DNA from: Octopus bimaculoides
Lineage: Eukaryota
Assembly (NCBI RefSeq): GCF_001194135.2
Contig: NC_068983.1
Coordinates: forward strand, 151,364,200 to 151,428,199
Length of the DNA stretch: 64,000 nt
Direction: 5' to 3'
Shown: positions 5,531 to 49,334 of the stretch, one piece after another
Layout: every line of letters starts with the position of its first letter
How positions within the stretch are numbered: position 1 is the stretch's first letter
Notes under the pieces: model-generated
Database searches by the model: none
What the model was told of the DNA's origin: nothing
The model's input: the letters and a program-made list of their open reading frames with translations, nothing else
Position numbers and translations under genes: made by a program

Positions 5531-5901
5531 CTCTTTTACTCCTTTACTTGTTTCAGTCATTAGACTGCGGCCACAAAAACATTTTAGCCGAATGACTCCA
5601 GTGTTGTTTTATGTTTTATCGACTCCAGTGTTGTCTTATTTTTTTAAAATGTTTCTAAGTTACGGGGGGGCGGGCGTAAACACACCAACACCAGTTGTGA
5701 AGCTGTGTGTGTGTGTGTATGTGTGTATGGAGGGAGAAACAGACAGACAGAAACGCACACACATATATATACGACGGGCTTCTTTCAGTCTCCGTCTACC
5801 AAATCCACTCAGAAGGTTTTGTTCGGCCCGAGGATATAGAAGAGGTCACTTACCCAAGGTGCCATGCAATGGGACTGAACCCGGAAGCATGTGGTTGGGA
5901 A
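5531..5901 (-). mobile_element. SINE A/B (CORE-type head + internal SSR + B tail), 5'-truncated
   Basis: rc of B box ggttcagtccc and CORE-like ggcaccttgggtaagt at 5769-5901, SSR at about 5705-5770, B domain at 5531-5700. Confidence 0.85.
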
Positions 5902-7402: not shown

Positions 7403-7518
7403 TAGGAGCAGGCGTGGCTGTGTGGTAAGAAGCTTGCTTCCCAACCACATGGTTCCGGGTTCAGTCTCACTGCGTGCACCTTAGGCAAGTGTCTTCTACT
7501 ATAGCTTCGGGCCGACCA
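7403..7518 (+). mobile_element. SINE A head + CORE, 3'-truncated into (TACA)n
   Basis: A box TGGCTGTGTGGT, B box GGTTCAGTCTC, accttaggcaagtgtctt. Confidence 0.9.
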
Positions 7519-8023: not shown

Positions 8024-8543
8024 ATGATCGATCTCGATTACTGGGACCGCCTTGAAGCTCTGAAACTACTCTCTCCAGCGAACCTGCGAGCGGTACATCA
8101 TTTCTACGATGTGGAGAATATACCGCCAGCATTGCCCAAACGACCTAAACATTAGTTTCAAGGTTCATCCAAAGCTGGGGCCACGGGCCATACGTCCCCT
8201 GCCCAATTCAGGATCACAACATATAGGTAGACTGCGACACAATTTCTTTTCCTCATCAGGCCCTGCCCTGTTTAACATTGCCCCAAAACTGATCAAAGAG
8301 GAAAAGGGCCCCGTCACCTTTAAACAGAATCTGGACAAATTTCTTCAAGGAATACCAGGTAAACCACCTATACTTGGATACAACTCACTCAACAAGAACT
8401 CCCTACTTGAATGGATTATGATACCACAAAACTTGACTCAAAAAGGATTTAGATAATCCTATCACGTGGTGCTATAAAGTTAGACATGGCCTGGACCAAT
8501 CTTTGGTCGAAACATATCTAAGTTTATCAAAGTTTAAGTTTAT
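8024..8543 (+). mobile_element. 5'-truncated CR1/L2-group LINE 3' end (ORF2 C-terminus, frameshifted)
   Basis: YWDRLEALKL /fs/ YSLQRTCERYIISTMWRI...RHNFFSSSGPALFNI...FKQNLDKFLQGIP...NSLLEW matches the CR1/L2-type post-RT C-terminal pattern; short AAGTTT tandem tail. Confidence 0.85.
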
Positions 8544-10125: not shown

Positions 10126-10317
10126 TTCCCTCCCCTCTCTCTCTCTTTCCCTCCCCCTCTCTCTGTCTTTCCCCCTCTCTCTCTCTCTTACCCTTCCCCC
10201 TCTCTTTCTTTCCTTCACACACACTCAAACACTTCCTAAGCTGCATTCTACTTTCACTTTCTGCCGCGATGCCACCACTTCTGCCTTGTTATTGTCATTA
10301 TTATTAAAACCACCATC

Positions 10318-10531
10318 TAAGGCGGCGAGATGGCAGAATCGTTAGCACGCTGGTCGAAATGCTTAGTGTTATTTCGCCCGTCGCTACGTTCTGGGTTCAA
10401 CTTCTGCCAAGATCGGCTTTGCCTCTCATCCTTTCGGGATCGATAAATTAAGTATCAGTGAAACACTGGGGTCGATGTAACCGACTCATCCTCTCCTCTT
10501 CAGGCCTTGTGCCTATAATAGAAAGGATTAT
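10318..10531 (+). mobile_element. SINE-C, full length, C1 tail
   Basis: taaggcggcgagatggcagaatcgttagc head, B box gggttcaacttc, tail aggccttgtgcctataatagaaaggattatt. Confidence 0.92.
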
Positions 10532-10540
10532 TAAAACCAC

Positions 10541-10730
10541 TAAGGCGGTGAGCTGGCAGAATCATTACCGCGCCGGACAAAATGTTTAGCGGCATTTCGT
10601 TCGTCTTCACGCTCTGAATTCAAATTCAACCGAGGTCAACTTTGCCTTTCATCCTTTCGGGATGAATACTAGAGCTGATTTACCCACTACCCACAAATTG
10701 CTGGCCTTGCGCTAAAGTTTGAAATTATTG
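10541..10730 (+). mobile_element. SINE-C, C3 tail, internal deletion; head-to-tail with the previous copy
   Basis: Head taaggcggtgagctggcagaatc; tail ctggccttgcgctaaagtttgaaattatt. Confidence 0.88.
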
Positions 10731-10852
10731 TAATTAAAACCACTGCAATCAGTTTTAAAACAATAAAGACGACAACGACCACGACGACCACCACCACTAC
10801 CACCATCACCAGAACAACAAATTCACTATCAATATTATATCCAGAGCAAATC

Positions 10853-11050
10853 GGCGAGCTGGCAGAAAAGTTAGCACGCCGGGCGCGTCTGTCTTTACGT
10901 TCTGAGTTCAAATTCCGCCGAAGTCGACTTTGCCTTTCATCCTTTCGGGATCGATAAATTAAGTAACCAATTACGCACTGGGATCGATCTAATCGACTGG
11001 CCCTTCCCCGCAAATTTCGGGCTTTGTGTCTAGAGTAGAAAAGATTATTA
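10853..11050 (+). mobile_element. SINE-C, C1 tail, lacking the 18-nt head hairpin
   Basis: Junction gggcg|cgtctgtc at 10885/10886; the rest is near consensus. Confidence 0.9.
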
Positions 11051-22477: not shown

Positions 22478-23738
22478 TAATAATCCATTCTACTACAAGC
22501 GAAAAGCCTGAAATTTGAGGGGAGGGGGACTGGCCAATTACACCGACCTCAGTGCTTAACTGGTACTCATTTTATCGCCCCACCCCCCACCCACGAAATG
22601 ATGAAAAGCTAAGACGACCTCGGTTGCAAATGAACCCAAGACGAAAAAACGAACGAAAATGCCGTTAAGATTTTTGTCCGGCGTGCTAACCATCCAGCCA
22701 TTTCGCCGCCTGAACAATAACTGGCACAAGACCAGCAATTTCAGGTAAGGGTAGTTTTGGGGACAGGAGATAAGTCGATTACATTGACCCCCAGTGTTCA
22801 ACTGGTACTTATTTTATCGACCCCGAAAGGATGAAATGTAAAGTCGACCTTGGCGGAATTTTTAGAGGCAGGCGAAATAGCGCTAAGCATTTTTGCCCGG
22901 CCTGCTAACGATTCTGCCAGCTCGCCGCCTTAATAAAAATAATAGTAAAGGCACAAGTCCTGAAATTTGGGGGAGGGGAGTTCTCGATTACATCGACGTC
23001 AGTACTCGACTGGTACTTATTTTATCGATCCCGAATGGATGAAAGGCAAAGTTGATCACGGTGGAATTTGAACTCAGAACGTAGCGACGGGCGAAATACT
23101 GCTAAGCATTTCGTTCAGCATGTTAACTATTCTGACAGCTCGCCGCCTTATATTATAATGATAATAATAATAATCTTTTCTGCTGGAGGCACAAGGCCTG
23201 CAATTTTGGAGGAGGGGGATAGTCGATTGCATCGACACCAGTGTTTCACAGCTACTTAATTTACTGACCCCGAAAGGATGAAAGGCAAAGTCAACTTCGC
23301 TGGAATTTGAACTCAGAACGTTGCAGTAGACGATTCTGCCTGCTCCCCACCTTAGATAACAATGATAATAATAATTCTTTCTACTATAAGCACAAAGACC
23401 TGAAATCTGGTGGGAGGTGACCAGTCAGTTAGATCGACCCTAGTACGCAACTGGTATTTAATTTATCGACCTCGAAAGGTAAAGTCGACTTCGGCGGAAT
23501 TTGAACTCAGAACGTAAAGACGGACGAAATACCACTAAGCATTTTACCCGCCGTGCTAACGTTTCTTATTTCTTTATTGCCCACAAGGGGCTAAAAATAG
23601 AGGGGACAAACAAGGACAGACAAAGGGATTAAGTCGATTAGATCGACACCAATGCGTAACTGGTACTTAATTTATCAACCCCGAAAGTATGAAAGGCAAA
23701 GTCGACCTCGGCGGAATTTGAACTCAGAACGTAGCGGC
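22478..23738 (-). mobile_element. Head-to-tail array of six SINE-C copies (about 22478-22711, 22722-22932, 22949-23150, 23170-23354, 23371-23564, 23565-23738)
   Basis: Repeated ggcacaag...tttatcgaccccgaaagg...ggcggaatttgaactcagaacg...ctcgccgcct units, all on the same strand, separated by AAT-rich linkers. The last copy has the C2 tail and runs into a gap. Confidence 0.92.
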
Positions 23739-24176
23739 NNNNNNNNNNNNNNNNNNNNNNNNNNNNNNNNNNNNNNNNNNNNNNNNNNNNNNNNNNNNNN
23801 NNNNNNNNNNNNNNNNNNNNNNNNNNNNNNNNNNNNNNNNNNNNNNNNNNNNNNNNNNNNNNGTGGTGGTGGTGGTGGTGGTGGTGGTGGTGGTGGTGGT
23901 GGGATGATGAGTGATAATGATGGTGTTGGTGTAGTTGTTGTTGTTGTTGTTGTTATTGGTGTTGGTGAAGATAGACACTGATAATACTGTTGCTGATAGC
24001 CTTAATATTAAAAGCCTGCACCGGCCGTAGATCACGTTGAATTTGACAGCTTGCCACGCACAGCCAACCACTTACACACACAAGTGCTCACACACTTGCA
24101 GACAGACATTCCTTCAAACACCACATACACAAGCAAACTCACAAACAAAAAAGCATATATCTTAATCAACATTAAG

Positions 24177-25896: not shown

Positions 25897-26062
25897 TAGG
25901 CGCAGGAGTGGCTGTGTGGTAAGTAGCTTGCTTACCAGCCACATGGTCTCGGGTTCAGTCCCATTGCGTGGCACCTTGGGCAAGTGTCTTCTACTATAGC
26001 CTCGGGCCGACCAAAGCCTTGTGAGTGGATTTGGTAGTCGGAAACTGAAAGAAGCCCGTCGT
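25897..26062 (+). mobile_element. Young SINE A (tRNA head + CORE), followed by (TA)n and a gap
   Basis: ggcgcaggagtggctgtgtggtaag...gggttcagtccc...ggcaccttgggcaagtgtcttc; nearly identical to 45550-45715. Confidence 0.95.
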
Positions 26063-27130
26063 ATATATGTATATATATATATATATATATATNNNNNNNN
26101 NNNNNNNNNNNNNNNNNNNNNNNNNNNNNNNNNNNNNNNNNNNNNNNNNNNNNNNNNNNNNNNNNNNNNNNNNNNNNNNNNNNNNNNNNNNNNNNNNNNN
26201 NNNNNNNNNNNNNNNNNNNNNNNNNNNNNNNNNNNNNNNNNNNNNNNNNNNNNNNNNNNNNNNNNNNNNNNNNNNNNNNNNNNNNNNNNNNNNNNNNNNN
26301 NNNNNNNNNNNNNNNNNNNNNNNNNNNNNNNNNNNNNNNNNNNNNNNNNNNNNNNNNNNNNNNNNNNNNNNNNNNNNNNNNNNNNNNNNNNNNNNNNNNN
26401 NNNNNNNNNNNNNNNNNNNNNNNNNNNNNNNNNNNNNNNNNNNNNNNNNNNNNNNNNNNNNNNNNNNNNNNNNNNNNNNNNNNNNNNNNNNNNNNNNNNN
26501 NNNNNNNNNNNNNNNNNNNNNNNNNNNNNNNNNNNNNNNNNNNNNNNNNNNNNNNNNNNNNNNNNNNNNNNNNNNNNNNNNNNNNNNNNNNNNNNNNNNN
26601 NNNNNNNNNNNNNNNNNNNNNNNNNNNNNNNNNNNNNNNNNNNNNNNNNNNNNNNNNNNNNNNNNNNNNNNNNNNNNNNNNNNNNNNNNNNNNNNNNNNN
26701 NNNNNNNNNNNNNNNNNNNNNNNNNNNNNNNNNNNNNNNNNNNNNNNNNNNNNNNNNNNNNNNNNNNNNNNNNNNNNNNNNNNNNNNNNNNNNNNNNNNN
26801 NNNNNNNNNNNNNNNNNNNNNNNNNNNNNNNNNNNNNNNNNNNNNNNNNNNNNNNNNNNNNNNNNNNNNNNNNNNNNNNNNNNNNNNNNNNNNNNNNNNN
26901 NNNNNNNNNNNNNNNNNNNNNNNNNNNTTTAAATATGCTTCTGAAAGACACAAGCACAAAAAAAAAATTGAAAATAAAAAATAGATAAAATAAAAACAAA
27001 TTTTAAGATGTGGAATAAAACAGAAATACAAGTGGTATATTATTACATGGACAGCGAAGTTCAAGGACATTTCTAAATCCTAGTGCATACATAGATATTA
27101 GAGGCAAAAGGAGGACAGGGAGGAACAAAA

Positions 27131-27755: not shown

Positions 27756-29470
27756 NNNNNNNNNNNNNNNNNNNNNNNNNNNNNNNNNNNNNNNNNNNNN
27801 NNNNNNNNNNNNNNNNNNNNNNNNNNNNNNNNNNNNNNNNNNNNNNNNNNNNNNNNNNNNNNNNNNNNNNNNNNNNNNNNNNNNNNNNNNNNNNNNNNNN
27901 NNNNNNNNNNNNNNNNNNNNNNNNNNNNNNNNNNNNNNNNNNNNNNNNNNNNNNNNNNNNNNNNNNNNNNNNNNNNNNNNNNNNNNNNNNNNNNNNNNNN
28001 NNNNNNNNNNNNNNNNNNNNNNNNNNNNNNNNNNNNNNNNNNNNNNNNNNNNNNNNNNNNNNNNNNNNNNNNNNNNNNNNNNNNNNNNNNNNNNNNNNNN
28101 NNNNNNNNNNNNNNNNNNNNNNNNNNNNNNNNNNNNNNNNNNNNNNNNNNNNNNNNNNNNNNNNNNNNNNNNNNNNNNNNNNNNNNNNNNNNNNNNNNNN
28201 NNNNNNNNTAGCTGGGCCCCGTGCCGTCAGAAATGACGACAAATTGTAGTATTTTATACATAAATAAGGTACAATAATAATTCTTTTATTACTAAATTTT
28301 TAGTGAAAAATCTATCCGCAACTAACATCCTTTCACTGCTTGTTTCCTTCAAAAGAATTTTCAAGTTTTCCTTCCTTCTTGTCCGACTTAAGGCCACATA
28401 AAGCTGGCCGTGACTAAATACGGGAGCTGGCAAGTAAATACCAAAGGCAGTGTTGAAACGTTGTTTGATTTTTCTTTTCAGCGTTGAATGTTCACCATCC
28501 CACTTGTATTGCACACACACACACAAAACACACACAAATACACACAAATATTCACATACCTCCCTTTTACATACACGCATATAAACTCACACCTAAGGTC
28601 TCAAAATGACCCTTTTCGTTGAATTATGAGCACAGAAATCCTCCGTTGAACCAATACTAAGAGCATTGAATCTAGCTTATACTGGTTCAAAGAAGACGGC
28701 TGAGGCATACAGTGCACGTCTAATTTTCCCTTAGGATAATCTACGACGAGGGACATAGAAGTCTATGTAAAGCATGTAGACAAAAGCTGCATCCGCTAAA
28801 AGACGACCTAAATTTATTTCATGAAGAGCAGCATAAATTCTTCAAGAATGAAAAGTATCGCTGCAGATTGTTTACTCTGGCGGTTTCAGCAAGGAACAAA
28901 GAGGCATGTAGCCAGATAAACCCCAAGATTTATATGATCCACCTTCGATGGACATTCCGCTTCAAGGATTGCGAGATACAGTCTTCAAAGGGCGTAGAAA
29001 TGAAGATGTTCACCATCTGATATCATTGGTAATCGTTAGTAAACCAGTGTGTGAGTGTCTGTATGTACTAGTATATATATATATGCGTATGTGTGTGTGT
29101 GTGTGTGTATGTATGTACGTGTGTGTGCCTGTGTGAGTTTGTGATTGTGTGTGTGTATGTGTGTGCGTGCATGTTTGCAATGAAGAGAGATGATCAATGC
29201 GTATCTATATGTTTTTATGCCATCTTATTGCAATATTAGAAAAGTTGTAGCTAAAAAAACACTTGGAAGTATATAATTTATTTCCGTGATACAATTAAAC
29301 GAAATAAACTAAAATCTAATTTACACCCTACGATAATATATGAGTGGGTGTGTTAGGGCTGTGTTTATATACAAATATTCAAGCATCTATATATCTACAT
29401 ACATATACATCTATATATAAGTATACACAGACACACATATGTACATATACATACATATGCATCCATTCAA

Positions 29471-36859: not shown

Positions 36860-37204
36860 TAGGTGCAGGTGTTGTTGTGTGGTAAGAAGTTTGCTTCCTG
36901 ACAACATGGTTCCGGGTTCAGTTCCAGTGTCTTCTACTGTGGTCTTGGGCCGACCAAAGCTTTGTGAGTAGATTTGATTGACGGAAACTAAAAGAAGCCT
37001 GTCGTATATTTTGATATGAACGTGTGTCTTTGTATTGGTATGTTTATGTCCCTGTAAACTAGCGGTTCGGCTAAATGACCCGATGGAATAAGTACAAGGC
37101 TTTTAAAAAAAGTACTGGGAGCAATTCATTCGACTAAAACTTCTTCAAGGCGGTGCCCCAACATGGCCGCAATCTAATGACTGGAGCAAGTAAAGGGTAA
37201 AAGA
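36860..37204 (+). mobile_element. SINE A/B, full span, diverged, with part of CORE deleted
   Basis: Head aggtgcaggtgttgttgtgtggtaag, B box ggttcagttcc, gaagcctgtcgtatat, then B domain to gtaaagggtaaaaga. Confidence 0.88.
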
Positions 37205-41427: not shown

Positions 41428-41857
41428 TTATATTGGACAAAATGCTTAGCGGCATTTTTTCGACTCCTCACTTCTAAGTTCAAATGCCTCCACGGCGGAC
41501 TTTGCTTTGCAATCTTTAGAGATCGATAAAAGAAGTTACATTTGAGTACTGTGGTCGATGTAAACGATTTTCCCCTTCCCTCAAAATGGCTGGCGTTGTA
41601 CCAAAAATGAGAAAGAATTATTATTGTGGTTCAGCATCGTGTTTATATTGGACAAAATGCTCAGCGGTTTCTCCCGACTCTTCGTGTTCTGAGTTCAAAT
41701 GCCCTCACGGTCGCCTTTGCTATACATCCTTTTACGATCGATAAAATAAGTTTCATTTGAACACTGGGGGGTTGATGTAAACGACTTCCCCTTCCCCTCA
41801 AGATGGCTAGCCTTGTAGCAAAAATGAGAAAGAATTATTATTGTGGTTCGGCATCGT
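41428..41857 (+). mobile_element. Local tandem duplication (~215-217 bp x2) of a 5'-truncated, diverged SINE-C plus flank
   Basis: Both units start ttatattggacaaaatgc (41428, 41643) and end aaaaatgagaaagaattattattgtggttc(a/g)gcatcgt (41640, 41857). Confidence 0.88.
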
Positions 41858-42900: not shown

Positions 42901-43230
42901 ATAAGAATTCTTTCTATTACAGGCATAAAGGCCTGAAGTATTTGACAAAGGAGCTAGTCGATTACATCGACCCCAGTGTTCGACTGGTACTTATTTTATC
43001 GACCCCCGAAAGGATGAAAGGCAAAGTTGGCTTCGGCAGAATTTGAACTCAGAACGCGAAGACAGACGGAATACCACTAAACATACATAACAACAACAAC
43101 CACAACAGTAATAAGAATGATAATAATAAAGCTTTTGAATTTTGGCACAAGGCCTGAAAACTTGTGGGGAAGGAATAAGTCGATTACATTGACCCTAGTG
43201 TTCAACTGATACTTATTTTATCGACCCCCG
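42901..43230 (-). mobile_element. Two SINE-C pieces (42901-43083, 5'-truncated; 43131-43230, 3' half)
   Basis: gtcgattacatcgaccccagtgttcgactggtacttattttatcgaccccc motif occurs twice. Confidence 0.88.
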
Positions 43231-45549: not shown

Positions 45550-45715
45550 TAGGCGCAGGAGTGGCCGTGTGGTAAGTAGCTTGCTTACCAACCACATGGT
45601 TCCGGGTTCAGTCCCACTGCGTGACACCTTGGGCAAGTGTCTTCTACTATAGCCTCGGGCCGACCAAAGCCTTGTGAGTGGATTTGGTAGACAGAAACTG
45701 AAAGAAGCCCATCGT
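45550..45715 (+). mobile_element. Young SINE A (tRNA head + CORE), followed by (TA)(TG)n(AG)n
   Basis: Near-identical to 25897-26062. Confidence 0.95.
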
Positions 45716-45717
45716 AC

Positions 45718-45775
<58 letters not shown>

Positions 45776-48494: not shown

Positions 48495-48886
48495 TGAGAA
48501 ATTAATAGCTTAGGGAGGTGCTGCCTTCTAGTGTGTGTATCGAAAGGTGGACGAAAGTGGCAAGTCTGGTAAGACCGAATGGATCGACTCTGAGTATGCT
48601 TTCCTAAGCAGGAAGAATGAAACTGGAAGAAGGCACTTTCCCATACCTTGGGGATGGTGGAGTAATCCGGGATTTTTGCGTGGGATTTATCCCGAATTAC
48701 CCGAAGTGAACTGCTCCGCTATTGGGGGTTCTATTTATTTATTTGCTTATTTATCTATTTCTTTAATTTCTATTATATATCCTTTGTTATATCTTGTGGT
48801 AGTGTAAACTCCACCTGTTTTTGTTTTTGTTTTCGTCCTTTGAAATTGTACTCAATCTTTTGGGCCTTTGTGGCCAATAAGAAAAG
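48495..48886 (+). mobile_element. 5'-truncated L1/Tx1-clade-like LINE 3' end
   Basis: Frame 48512-48607 reads REVLPSSVCIERWTKVASLVRPNGSTLSMLS* (resembles the L1/Tx1 ORF2 terminal segment), then a T-rich 3' UTR ending in GGCC-TTTGT-GGCC-AATAAGAAAAG. Clade call is from recollection of the pattern. Confidence 0.5.
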
Positions 48887-48894
48887 TCATTAAA

Positions 48895-49334
48895 TAAGGC
48901 GGCGTGCTGGCAGAATCGTTAGCACGCCGGGCGAAATACTTAGCGGTATTTCGTCTGCCGTTACGTTCTGAGTTCAAATTCCGCCGAGGTTGACTTTGCC
49001 TTTCATCCTTTCGGGGTCGATAAATTAAGTACCGCTTACGCACTGGGGTCGATGTAATCGACTTAATCCATTTGTCTGTCCTTGTTTGTCCCCTCTGTGT
49101 TTAGCACCTTGTGGGCAATGAAGAAATAAGAATCGTTAGCACGTAAGACAATATGCTTAAGGGTATTATTTTGTCCGTCTTTACGTTCTGAGTTCGTATT
49201 CCGCCGAGTTCACATTGCCTTTTATCTTTTCGGGGTCAATAAAATAACTATCAGTGAAACACTGGGGTCAATGTTATCGACTAGTCCCCCATAACCAAAT
49301 TCTAGGCCTTGTGCCTTCAGTAGTAAGGATTATT
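48895..49334 (+). mobile_element. Compound SINE: near-consensus C2 copy (48895-49130) fused to a headless, more diverged C1 copy (49131-49334)
   Basis: Junction gaaataag|aatcgttagc at 49130/49131. Confidence 0.92.

What the first reader, a model, noticed from the sequence alone, without database searches (positions are those of the whole stretch)
23551..23640. Top candidate: SINE C2 is always fused at the same nucleotide in the A-box of another SINE-C (site-specific SINE-into-SINE insertion, or a dimeric SINE)
Seen: all three C2-tailed copies end ...GAAATAAG and continue directly into AA(A/T)CGTTAGCACG of a C1 copy lacking its first ~19 nt (junctions 23564/23565, 49130/49131, 63077/63078). 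At 49 kb the C2 half is near consensus while the C1 half is much more diverged and of a different subtype, which favours independent insertions into pre-existing copies over amplification of one dimer. Established: Tx1-clade LINEs are often target-specific (other transposons, snRNA and tRNA loci). Inference: C2 borrows a Tx1-type endonuclease that cuts at GGCAG^AA in the Pol III A-box, disabling the host's promoter and replacing it with its own - a hyperparasitic SINE. n=3, and AG/AA microhomology or recombination could also contribute.
Basis: partly seen in the sequence, partly recalled or inferred. Interest (0 to 1): 0.82.

Follow-up and report, generated by a model that had tools for sequence, protein, structure and literature searches.

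The report
Two-unit SINE with one fixed junction
Three copies of a short mobile element in this window are each joined, at exactly the same base, to a second copy that lacks its first ~18 bases; this is most likely an ordinary two-unit (dimeric) SINE, not a SINE that hunts other SINEs, although one of the three copies does not fit the simple picture.

Summary
The 67-nt "C2" segment occurs three times in the window. Each time it runs straight into AA(A/T)CGTTAGCACG of a second SINE-C unit that lacks half of its A-box (21-mer junction: 3 hits, 0.01 expected).

The C2 "tail" is a homologue of the normal C1 3' domain. It carries a ~20-nt insertion and has lost the terminal GGATTATT(ATT)n. The junction has AG microhomology and lies in the loop of a 12-bp hairpin in the SINE head.

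At 23.5 kb and 63 kb the two halves are equally diverged. No orphan half-head or target-site duplication lies upstream of either evaluable copy.

My best reading (0.6) is a dimeric SINE. A small deletion in a head-to-tail SINE array, which are very common here, made the junction once. The dimer is then mobilised through the right unit's C1 tail.

The 49-kb copy is a true mosaic: the left half is 5.3% from consensus and the right half 18.8% (p=3e-4). It needs either homologous exchange with a resident old copy or recurrent position-specific insertion. Nothing in the window supports a Tx1 link.

The parts
23632..23738 (-). Locus C, left unit (core). The 5' part is missing because of assembly gap 23739-23862.
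   Evidence: nhmmer model positions 60-234 are matched together with the linker.
23565..23631 (-). Locus C, 67-nt C2 segment (linker): taatccctttgtctgtccttgtttgtcccctctatttttagccccttgtgggcaataaagaaataag
   Evidence: Differs at 1 of 67 nt from the locus J linker.
23369..23564 (-). Locus C, right unit. C1-type, starts at AAACGTTAGCACG, lacks the 5' arm of the head hairpin, and ends ...agaaagaattatta.
   Evidence: 9.9% from the young consensus, against 6.5% for its left unit (p=0.49).
48897..49063 (+). Locus G, left unit, full length, with intact head and A- and B-box-like motifs.
   Evidence: 5.3% from the young consensus.
49064..49130 (+). Locus G, 67-nt C2 segment (linker).
   Evidence: 4 of 67 differences from J and 5 of 67 from C.
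49131..49335 (+). Locus G, right unit. An old C1 copy of the 'cagtgaaacact' subtype that starts at AATCGTTAGCACG. It diverges from the other right units immediately after these 13 nt.
   Evidence: 18.8% from the young consensus. 22-23% from the other right cores.
63145..63312 (-). Locus J, left unit, full length.
   Evidence: 4.0% from the young consensus.
63078..63144 (-). Locus J, 67-nt C2 segment (linker).
62879..63077 (-). Locus J, right unit. Young C1 type, starts at AAACGTTAGCACG. Its tail is cut short at ...agaaaaga.
   Evidence: 6.0% from the young consensus.
48853..48884 (+). Possible decayed C2-like 3' end (…ttgggcctttgtggccaataagaaa). It is followed by gtcattaaat and then the full head of the locus G left unit. 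It shows what an unfused tail-to-head arrangement looks like.
   Evidence: nhmmer E=1.3, model positions 199-229; local alignment z about 4-5. Weak.
54950..55005 (+). 3' region of copy I2. It resembles the C2 segment (ATCCATTTGTCT… exact 12-mer) and is followed by unrelated low-complexity DNA, not by a C1 unit.
   Evidence: profile alignment to model position 195; z=3.5-4.2 against C2 linkers and <=0.6 against C1 tails. Moderate to weak.

Best explanation
C2-C1 is a composite (dimeric) SINE.

Anatomy (shown):
- The left unit is a complete young SINE-C with head hairpin and A- and B-box-like motifs.
- The 67-nt 'C2 tail' is an internal linker. It is a C1-type 3' domain with a ~20-nt T/G/C-rich insertion, and it has lost its terminal GGATTATT(ATT)n.
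- The right unit is a SINE-C that begins in the loop of the head hairpin. It therefore lacks half of the A-box, but it keeps the normal C1 3' domain and ATT tail.

Mechanism (inferred):
- SINE-C copies here pile up head-to-tail, because new copies land at ATT-rich sites that the previous copy's tail plus TSD regenerate.
- In one such array a deletion of about 30 nt removed the end of the upstream tail, the spacer and the first ~16-18 nt of the next head. It joined them at an AG microhomology.
- The fused unit is transcribed by Pol III from the left promoter. The partner LINE of C1 copies it through the right unit's C1 tail, so every descendant carries the same junction.
- The 49-kb copy is a secondary mosaic. 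Young left unit, linker and the first 13 nt of the right unit were joined to a resident old C1. This happened by homology-dependent exchange: gene conversion, or priming of the dimer RNA on a nicked resident copy.
For: - The junction is identical, with no variable-length tail, in 3 of 3 copies.
- The linker aligns to the C1 3' domain (CCTTGTGGGCAATAAAGAAATAAG vs CCTTGTGCCTATAATAGAAAGGATTATT) but lacks the terminal repeat that all C1 copies carry.
- There is AG microhomology at the break.
- The break lies in the 6-nt loop of a 12-bp hairpin: -22.8 kcal/mol, z=-4.75; the consensus head folds at -17.6.
- The halves are equally diverged at loci C and J (6.5 vs 9.9%, p=0.49; 4.0 vs 6.0%, p=0.6).
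- Left and right trees have the same topology, ((C,J),G).
- There is a single head and no orphan …GCTGGCAG or duplicated AATCGTTAGC upstream of 48897 or 63312.
- The head at the 49-kb locus looks young: 1 mismatch in 31 nt, P=0.013 if it belonged to the 18.8%-diverged resident copy.
- Raw material is abundant. 12 of 12 adjacent SINE-C pairs are on the same strand, tail to head (p=2e-4).
- Complex SINEs make up 13% of known SINE families (PMC3531059).
- Partial or full conversion of older SINE copies by younger ones is documented, at about 2% of young Alu copies (PMC554112).
Against: - Right halves differ from one another far more than left halves plus linkers do. C-J: 36/194 vs 11/174. G-J: 55/201 vs 18/235. 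C-G: 48/193 vs 14/174. Fisher p ranges from 5e-4 to 4e-8 and holds without CpG columns. Part of this comes from the poorly alignable C1 3' domain. For C-J the cores alone (13.4 vs 9.3%) are not significantly different.
- The 49-kb right half is clearly older than its left half (p=3e-4). One mosaic in three is more than a ~2% conversion rate predicts.
- The right halves of C and J share no exclusive derived state.
- n=3, and the genome could not be sampled further.
Confidence: 0.6

Rival explanations
1. Homology-guided spread. A master dimer exists, but its RNA or cDNA usually integrates by pairing its right-unit sequence with nicked or broken resident C1 copies. This converts monomers into dimers. 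The junction is inherited, and the 3' part of each right unit is the resident's.
For: - It explains the identical junction together with heterogeneous right halves.
- It explains the switch to unrelated sequence right after the 13 shared nt at 49 kb.
- It explains the lack of an orphan head or TSD.
- Cotranscribed target sequence is reported to aid precise integration of target-specific LINEs (discussed in PMC4494074). SINE-by-SINE conversion is documented (PMC554112).
Against: - The halves at C and J are equally aged, which plain dimer insertion already explains.
- No young-to-old switch point is visible inside the right units of C or J.
- Such a process is known only as a rare side route (about 2%).
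Confidence: 0.12
2. C2 is an autonomous-looking monomeric SINE whose partner LINE endonuclease cuts GGCAG^AA in the A-box of SINE-C. Each C2-C1 is then an independent site-specific insertion that disables the host copy's promoter.
For: - 3 of 3 copies have the same junction and the same orientation.
- The 49-kb locus has a young C2 on an old C1.
- A SINE with near-exclusive insertion into one site of another transposon is known: SINEU-3 with Tx1-Mar LINEs, 90% in Mariner-N4_AMi (PMC4494074).
- L1-Tx1 LINEs are reported as recently active in Octopus vulgaris (PMC13282606). This is relevant only if the window is from an octopus, which was not shown.
Against: - No upstream half-target and no TSD at either evaluable 5' end. 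SINEU-3 has a 16-bp TSD.
- The C2 3' end is a truncated homologue of the C1 3' domain. The same or a sister LINE is therefore expected, and C1 copies are not A-box-specific.
- The head at 49 kb looks young (P=0.013-0.12).
- No LINE 3' end abuts AATCGTTAGC in the window, and there are no tRNA genes to test.
- 9 intact heads are unoccupied.
Confidence: 0.1
3. Recurrent de novo dimerisation during reverse transcription. C1 RNAs are cleaved in the loop of the head hairpin. The reverse transcriptase runs off at that 5' end and jumps, by AG microhomology, onto the 3' end of a C2-type RNA.
For: - The break lies in the hairpin loop with AG microhomology.
- The model explains heterogeneous right halves without any targeting.
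- Recurrent 5' addition of RNA-derived sequence to SINEs is described (PMC4494074).
Against: - It does not explain why the acceptor is always C2 and never the far more abundant C1 RNA.
- It needs a defined C2 RNA 3' end at ...AAUAAG, with no terminator there.
- The old-looking 49-kb right unit would have to come from a transcribed decayed copy.
Confidence: 0.07
4. Assembly artefact. The draft (16% N, 26 gaps) joined reads from different SINE copies, which created the mosaic at 49 kb.
For: The window is a gappy short-read-like draft. SINE copies are dense.
Against: - The only exact sequence shared between a dimer junction and a monomer head is about 15 nt (AGAATCGTTAGCACG). That is too short for a k-mer or overlap join.
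- The junction is seen three times in different flanks.
Confidence: 0.03

Closest known systems
Dimeric / complex SINEs (Alu, Twin of Culex, B1-dID; category defined in SINEBase, PMC3531059)
   Same: Two related Pol III-derived units are joined head to tail at one fixed nucleotide. Only the left unit keeps a full promoter. The right unit carries the functional 3' end. Monomers coexist with dimers.
   Different: - The linker here is a recognisable decayed 3' domain of the same SINE.
- The right units are unusually heterogeneous.
- One of three copies is a young/old mosaic.
SINEU-3 and Tx1-Mar LINEs inserting into Mariner-N4_AMi in crocodilians (PMC4494074)
   Same: A SINE is found almost always at one position inside another transposon family. 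Tandem copies sandwich a TSD. That paper raised the same hitchhiking-versus-targeting question and settled it with 5'-truncated copies.
   Different: - SINEU-3 has a 16-bp TSD and retains target sequence on both sides.
- LINEs with the same target are known for it.
- Here there is no TSD, no upstream half-target and no LINE with that target.
- The host here is a sister SINE.
Gene conversion / replacement of older Alu copies by younger subfamilies (PMC554112; Kass, Batzer & Deininger 1995 as cited there)
   Same: A young SINE sequence ends up in the frame of an older resident copy with no new TSD. This gives mosaics like the 49-kb locus.
   Different: In Alu this affects about 2% of young copies. 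Here it is 1 of 3, and the converted tract would add a whole extra unit.
Target-homology-assisted integration of rDNA-specific R2 elements (cited in PMC4494074: Eickbush 2000, Fujimoto 2004)
   Same: Downstream target sequence carried on the RNA could pair with the target and fix the 3' junction.
   Different: R2 encodes its own site-specific endonuclease. Nothing of the kind is seen here.
Octopus tRNA-derived SINEs OK, OR1, OR2 (Ohshima & Okada 1994, cited in PMC4824008)
   Same: From memory, the window looks like a cephalopod draft with very abundant tRNA-type SINEs. SINEs make up 11.6% of the O. vulgaris genome (PMC13282606).
   Different: I could not compare sequences. The source organism was not identified by any tool. 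ARAGORN and Rfam do not recognise the head as a tRNA.

Membership tests
SINE (SINEBase definition, PMC3531059) | Short (<1 kb), interspersed and multicopy | tested here: met
   About 22-24 copies of ~200 nt in 53 kb of non-N sequence.
SINE (SINEBase definition, PMC3531059) | Head derived from tRNA/5S/7SL (>=60% identity) with an internal Pol III promoter | tested here: inconclusive
   There is an A-box-like TGGCAGAATCG and a B-box-like GAGTTCAAATTCC. ARAGORN finds no tRNA, and Rfam gives no tRNA hit even at E<=10.
SINE (SINEBase definition, PMC3531059) | 3' tail of simple repeats, with target-site duplications | tested here: met
   C1 copies end GGATTATT(ATT)n. Copies A1 and A2 are flanked by AAAACCAC(T).
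Dimeric (complex) SINE | Two complete or nearly complete SINE units in one element with a fixed junction | tested here: met
   Left unit plus linker plus a right unit lacking 15-18 nt. The junction is identical 3 times.
Dimeric (complex) SINE | The dimer amplifies as a unit: TSD around the whole dimer, halves of equal age, congruent phylogenies | tested here: inconclusive
   Halves are of equal age at 2 loci and unequal at the third. The tree topology is congruent but the branch lengths are not. TSDs are not decisive.
Dimeric (complex) SINE | >=100 copies per genome | not testable with these tools
   No copy of the genome is in any searchable collection.
Target-specific retroposon (Tx1-mobilised SINE such as SINEU-3) | Target sequence is retained on both sides of the insert, usually with a TSD | tested here: not met
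   The 5' flanks of 48897 and 63312 are unrelated to the SINE head. There is no duplicated AATCGTTAGC.
Target-specific retroposon (Tx1-mobilised SINE such as SINEU-3) | A partner LINE shares the 3' end and the same target | not testable with these tools
   There is no such LINE in the window. The LINE-like ORF at 8109-8456 has no Pfam or database hit.
Target-specific retroposon (Tx1-mobilised SINE such as SINEU-3) | Independent insertions: 5'-truncated copies at the same target, and hosts of different ages | tested here: inconclusive
   One host is clearly older than its insert. There are no 5'-truncated C2 copies in the window.

The most novel reading that the evidence does not exclude
C2 is a parasite of its sister SINE. 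The left unit plus linker repeatedly enters resident SINE-C copies at one nucleotide in the loop of the head hairpin / A-box. It does so either through a site-specific LINE endonuclease or through RNA-DNA homology, replacing the host copy's promoter with its own.
Probability: 0.2. Interest if true: 0.75.

Novelty: new member of a known kind. Interest (0 to 1): 0.3.

Why it matters
If it is a dimer, it is one more composite SINE. Its value is modest but real: the linker still shows how the dimer was born, by a tail-to-head array plus a small deletion at a hairpin apex.

If the minority reading holds, it would be the first SINE known to target another SINE's promoter. That would be a clean case of hyperparasitism among non-autonomous elements. 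It would also be a natural example of sequence-guided retro-insertion.

The 49-kb mosaic makes the question testable with a simple genome-wide tabulation.

Tried and rejected
External copies. I scanned for the linker and for generic SINE-C patterns in:
- metagenome contigs;
- prokaryotic genome contigs;
- viral contigs.
All gave 0 hits.

Protein route to more host DNA:
- The LINE-like ORF gave nothing.
- A window ORF is not on record.
- The Helitron/PIF1 fragment gave 75 short metagenomic hits. Four fetched contigs (L001-L004) carry no SINE-C.

Literature:
- No paper text contains the SINE sequence.
- The SINEBase supplements and the octopus genome paper are not held.

tRNA identity of the head: ARAGORN and Rfam were both negative.

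TSD analysis of the composites: only weak AT-rich candidates, not informative.

Rejected ideas:
- RNA editing as the cause of the diverged 49-kb right unit. Its changes are a mix of transitions and transversions with CpG decay.
- The right unit as the newcomer. It is the older half at 49 kb.
- Misassembly. The shared exact sequence is only about 15 nt.

Full report
CONTEXT

The window is a gappy draft with 10,511 N in 26 runs. It is AT-rich (38% G+C) and dense in microsatellites. No tool identified the organism. It looks to me like a cephalopod assembly, but that is memory, not a result.

A ~200-nt SINE ('SINE-C') is present in about 22-24 copies. Its head carries an A-box-like TGGCAGAATCG and a B-box-like GAGTTCAAATTCC. 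ARAGORN and Rfam do not call it a tRNA. Ordinary ('C1') copies end ...CCTTGTGCCTATAATAGAAAGGATTATT(ATT)n.

CHECK OF THE OBSERVATION

The copies are at 23565-23631 (-), 49064-49130 (+) and 63078-63144 (-).

Each runs without any spacer into AA(A/T)CGTTAGCACG of another SINE-C unit. The 21-mer across the junction has three perfect matches against 0.01 expected.

A profile alignment places the start of each right unit at model position 16, AGAATCG. So 15-18 nt of head are missing, and an AG is shared by both partners at the break.

Nine other copies have intact heads. None of the other truncated copies starts at this position.

WHAT THE C2 SEGMENT IS

In a 22-copy alignment the C2 segment aligns with the C1 3' domain. 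It carries an extra ~20 nt (TTTGTCTGTCCTTGTTTGTCC) and stops at ...GAAATAAG, where C1 continues ...GAAAGGATTATT(ATT)n.

It is therefore a C1-type 3' domain that has lost the terminal repeat every functional C1 copy has. In the three copies it shows no length-variable tail.

The cores of the left units belong to the same young subfamily as monomers A3 (10850-11050) and H (51322-51544) and as the right units at 23.5 and 63 kb.

WHERE THE BREAK LIES

The head folds into a 12-bp hairpin, CGGCGUGCUGGC / GUUAGCACGCCG, with loop AGAAUC. The 49-kb copy folds at -22.8 kcal/mol (z=-4.75) and the consensus at -17.6. The junction lies inside that loop. The right unit keeps the 3' arm only.

CONTEXT OF ARRAYS

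SINE-C copies are strongly clustered. All 12 adjacent pairs less than 200 nt apart are on the same strand, tail to head (p=2e-4). One array has six units (22478-23738).

At 10.3-10.8 kb two copies sandwich the repeat AAAACCAC(T). Another copy sits inside a long (ATT)n. New copies thus land at ATT-rich sites that the previous copy's tail plus TSD regenerate. Tail-to-head neighbours, the substrate for a dimer-forming deletion, are therefore plentiful.

A weak C2-like 3' end at 48853-48884 is followed by GTCATTAAAT and the full head of the next copy. It illustrates that arrangement. Deleting ~27 nt there would give almost exactly the C2-C1 junction.

DIMER OR TARGETED INSERTION

For a dimer:
- The junction is invariant and tail-less.
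- The linker is a truncated 3' domain.
- There is AG microhomology at the break.
- The halves are equally aged at 23.5 kb (6.5 vs 9.9% from the young consensus, p=0.49) and at 63 kb (4.0 vs 6.0%, p=0.6).
- Left and right parts give the same topology, ((C,J),G).
- There is only one head at each evaluable 5' end (48897, 63312). No retained …GCTGGCAG and no duplicated AATCGTTAGC lies upstream.
- Because the C2 3' end is a homologue of the C1 3' end, the same LINE partner is expected. C1 insertions are not A-box-specific.

Against a simple dimer:
- The 49-kb copy has a left unit 5.3% from the young consensus and a right unit 18.8% from it (8/150 vs 28/149, p=3e-4).
- Its right unit belongs to another subtype. 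It diverges from the others immediately after the 13 shared nucleotides.
- In all three pairwise comparisons the right halves differ 2.5-3.5 times more than left halves plus linkers. Fisher p ranges from 5e-4 to 4e-8, also without CpG columns.
- For the C-J pair this excess rests largely on the hard-to-align 3' domain.
- The right units of C and J share no exclusive derived state.

RECONCILING THE TWO

The junction must either have been made once and then moved onto an old resident copy, or be made repeatedly.

Homology-dependent replacement of older SINE copies by younger ones is documented for Alu at about 2% of young copies (PMC554112). It would give exactly the 49-kb structure. It needs no new TSD and gives a seamless single head.

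The head at 49 kb looks young: 1 mismatch in 31 nt, P=0.013 if it were the resident's, or 0.12 for the first 18 nt. This fits replacement from upstream better than retention of the resident's head.

The alternative is recurrent site-specific insertion. It has a real precedent in SINEU-3/Tx1-Mar, 90% of whose copies sit in one Mariner family with a 16-bp TSD (PMC4494074). Here it would need a homology-mediated 5' join to hide the missing half-target and TSD. It would also need a LINE with that specificity, and none is visible.

A third possibility is a reverse-transcriptase jump from an RNA cleaved in the hairpin loop. It does not explain why the acceptor is always C2.

Misassembly is unlikely, because only ~15 nt are shared exactly between a dimer junction and a monomer head.

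WEIGHING

Complex SINEs are common, at 13% of families (PMC3531059). A SINE that targets a SINE's promoter would be new. The 49-kb mosaic favours the recurrent models by perhaps two- to three-fold. The missing half-target and TSD, the truncated C1-type linker and the young head weigh the other way.

My estimates are:
- dimer with occasional exchange, 0.6;
- homology-guided conversion as the main mode, 0.12;
- endonuclease-targeted insertion, 0.1;
- template jumping, 0.07;
- artefact, 0.03.

LIMITS

n=3. One left unit is cut by a gap. Every attempt to obtain more of this genome failed.

Noticed in passing
window 22478-23738 (-); also 10320-11050 (+), 41435-41790 (+), 42944-43230 (-), 54557-54977 (+): SINE-C copies form head-to-tail arrays. 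All 12 adjacent pairs <200 nt apart are on the same strand. One array has six units. The next head abuts the ATT-rich tail of the previous copy.
   Followed up: partly
window 10285-10775 (+): Two different SINE-C copies sandwich the repeat AAAACCAC(T)...attattAAAACCACcatct[A1]ggattattAAAACCACT[A2]attgtaattAAAACCACTgcaatc. This indicates successive insertions into a target site regenerated by the TSD.
   Followed up: partly
window 51270-51600 (-): A near-full-length young SINE-C sits inside a long (ATT)n microsatellite on both sides. Either it targeted the microsatellite or its tail seeded one.
   Followed up: no
window 41430-41850 (+): Two SINE-C-like units have the same 5' truncation point (…tattggacaaaatgct) and the same 3' flank (gaattattattgtggttc). 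They are ~72% alike. This looks like an old tandem duplication or a separate headless family.
   Followed up: no
window 48897-48938 and the other intact heads: The SINE head forms a 12-bp hairpin whose 6-nt loop is the centre of the A-box-like motif. In the 49-kb copy an A>T change makes the stem perfect.
   Followed up: partly
window 5740-5900 (+), 45585-45753 (-), 25932-26068 (-), 58459-58621 (+), 7438-7518 (-), 36926-37009 (-): A second, unrelated ~160-nt interspersed repeat (…ggtgccatgcaatgggactgaacccggaa…), 78-88% alike between copies. Copies are often next to (TG)n/(TA)n runs and assembly gaps.
   Followed up: no
window 28254-28460 (-): A short ORF fragment has the C-terminal motif of Helitron/PIF1-type helicases (…PAPVFSHGQLYVALSRTRR…). 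The best database hit is 66% identical, and many hits are named PIF1. Pfam does not reach threshold.
   Followed up: partly
window 8109-8456 (+): A 115-aa ORF looks like the C-terminus of a LINE ORF2. It has no Pfam hit and no database relative. Its 3' flank does not resemble the SINE-C tail.
   Followed up: partly
whole window: 16% of the window is N, in 26 runs. Most gaps are bordered by (TA)n, (CA)n or trinucleotide repeats. Repeat content and SINE counts are therefore underestimates, and one of the three composites is cut by a gap.
   Followed up: no
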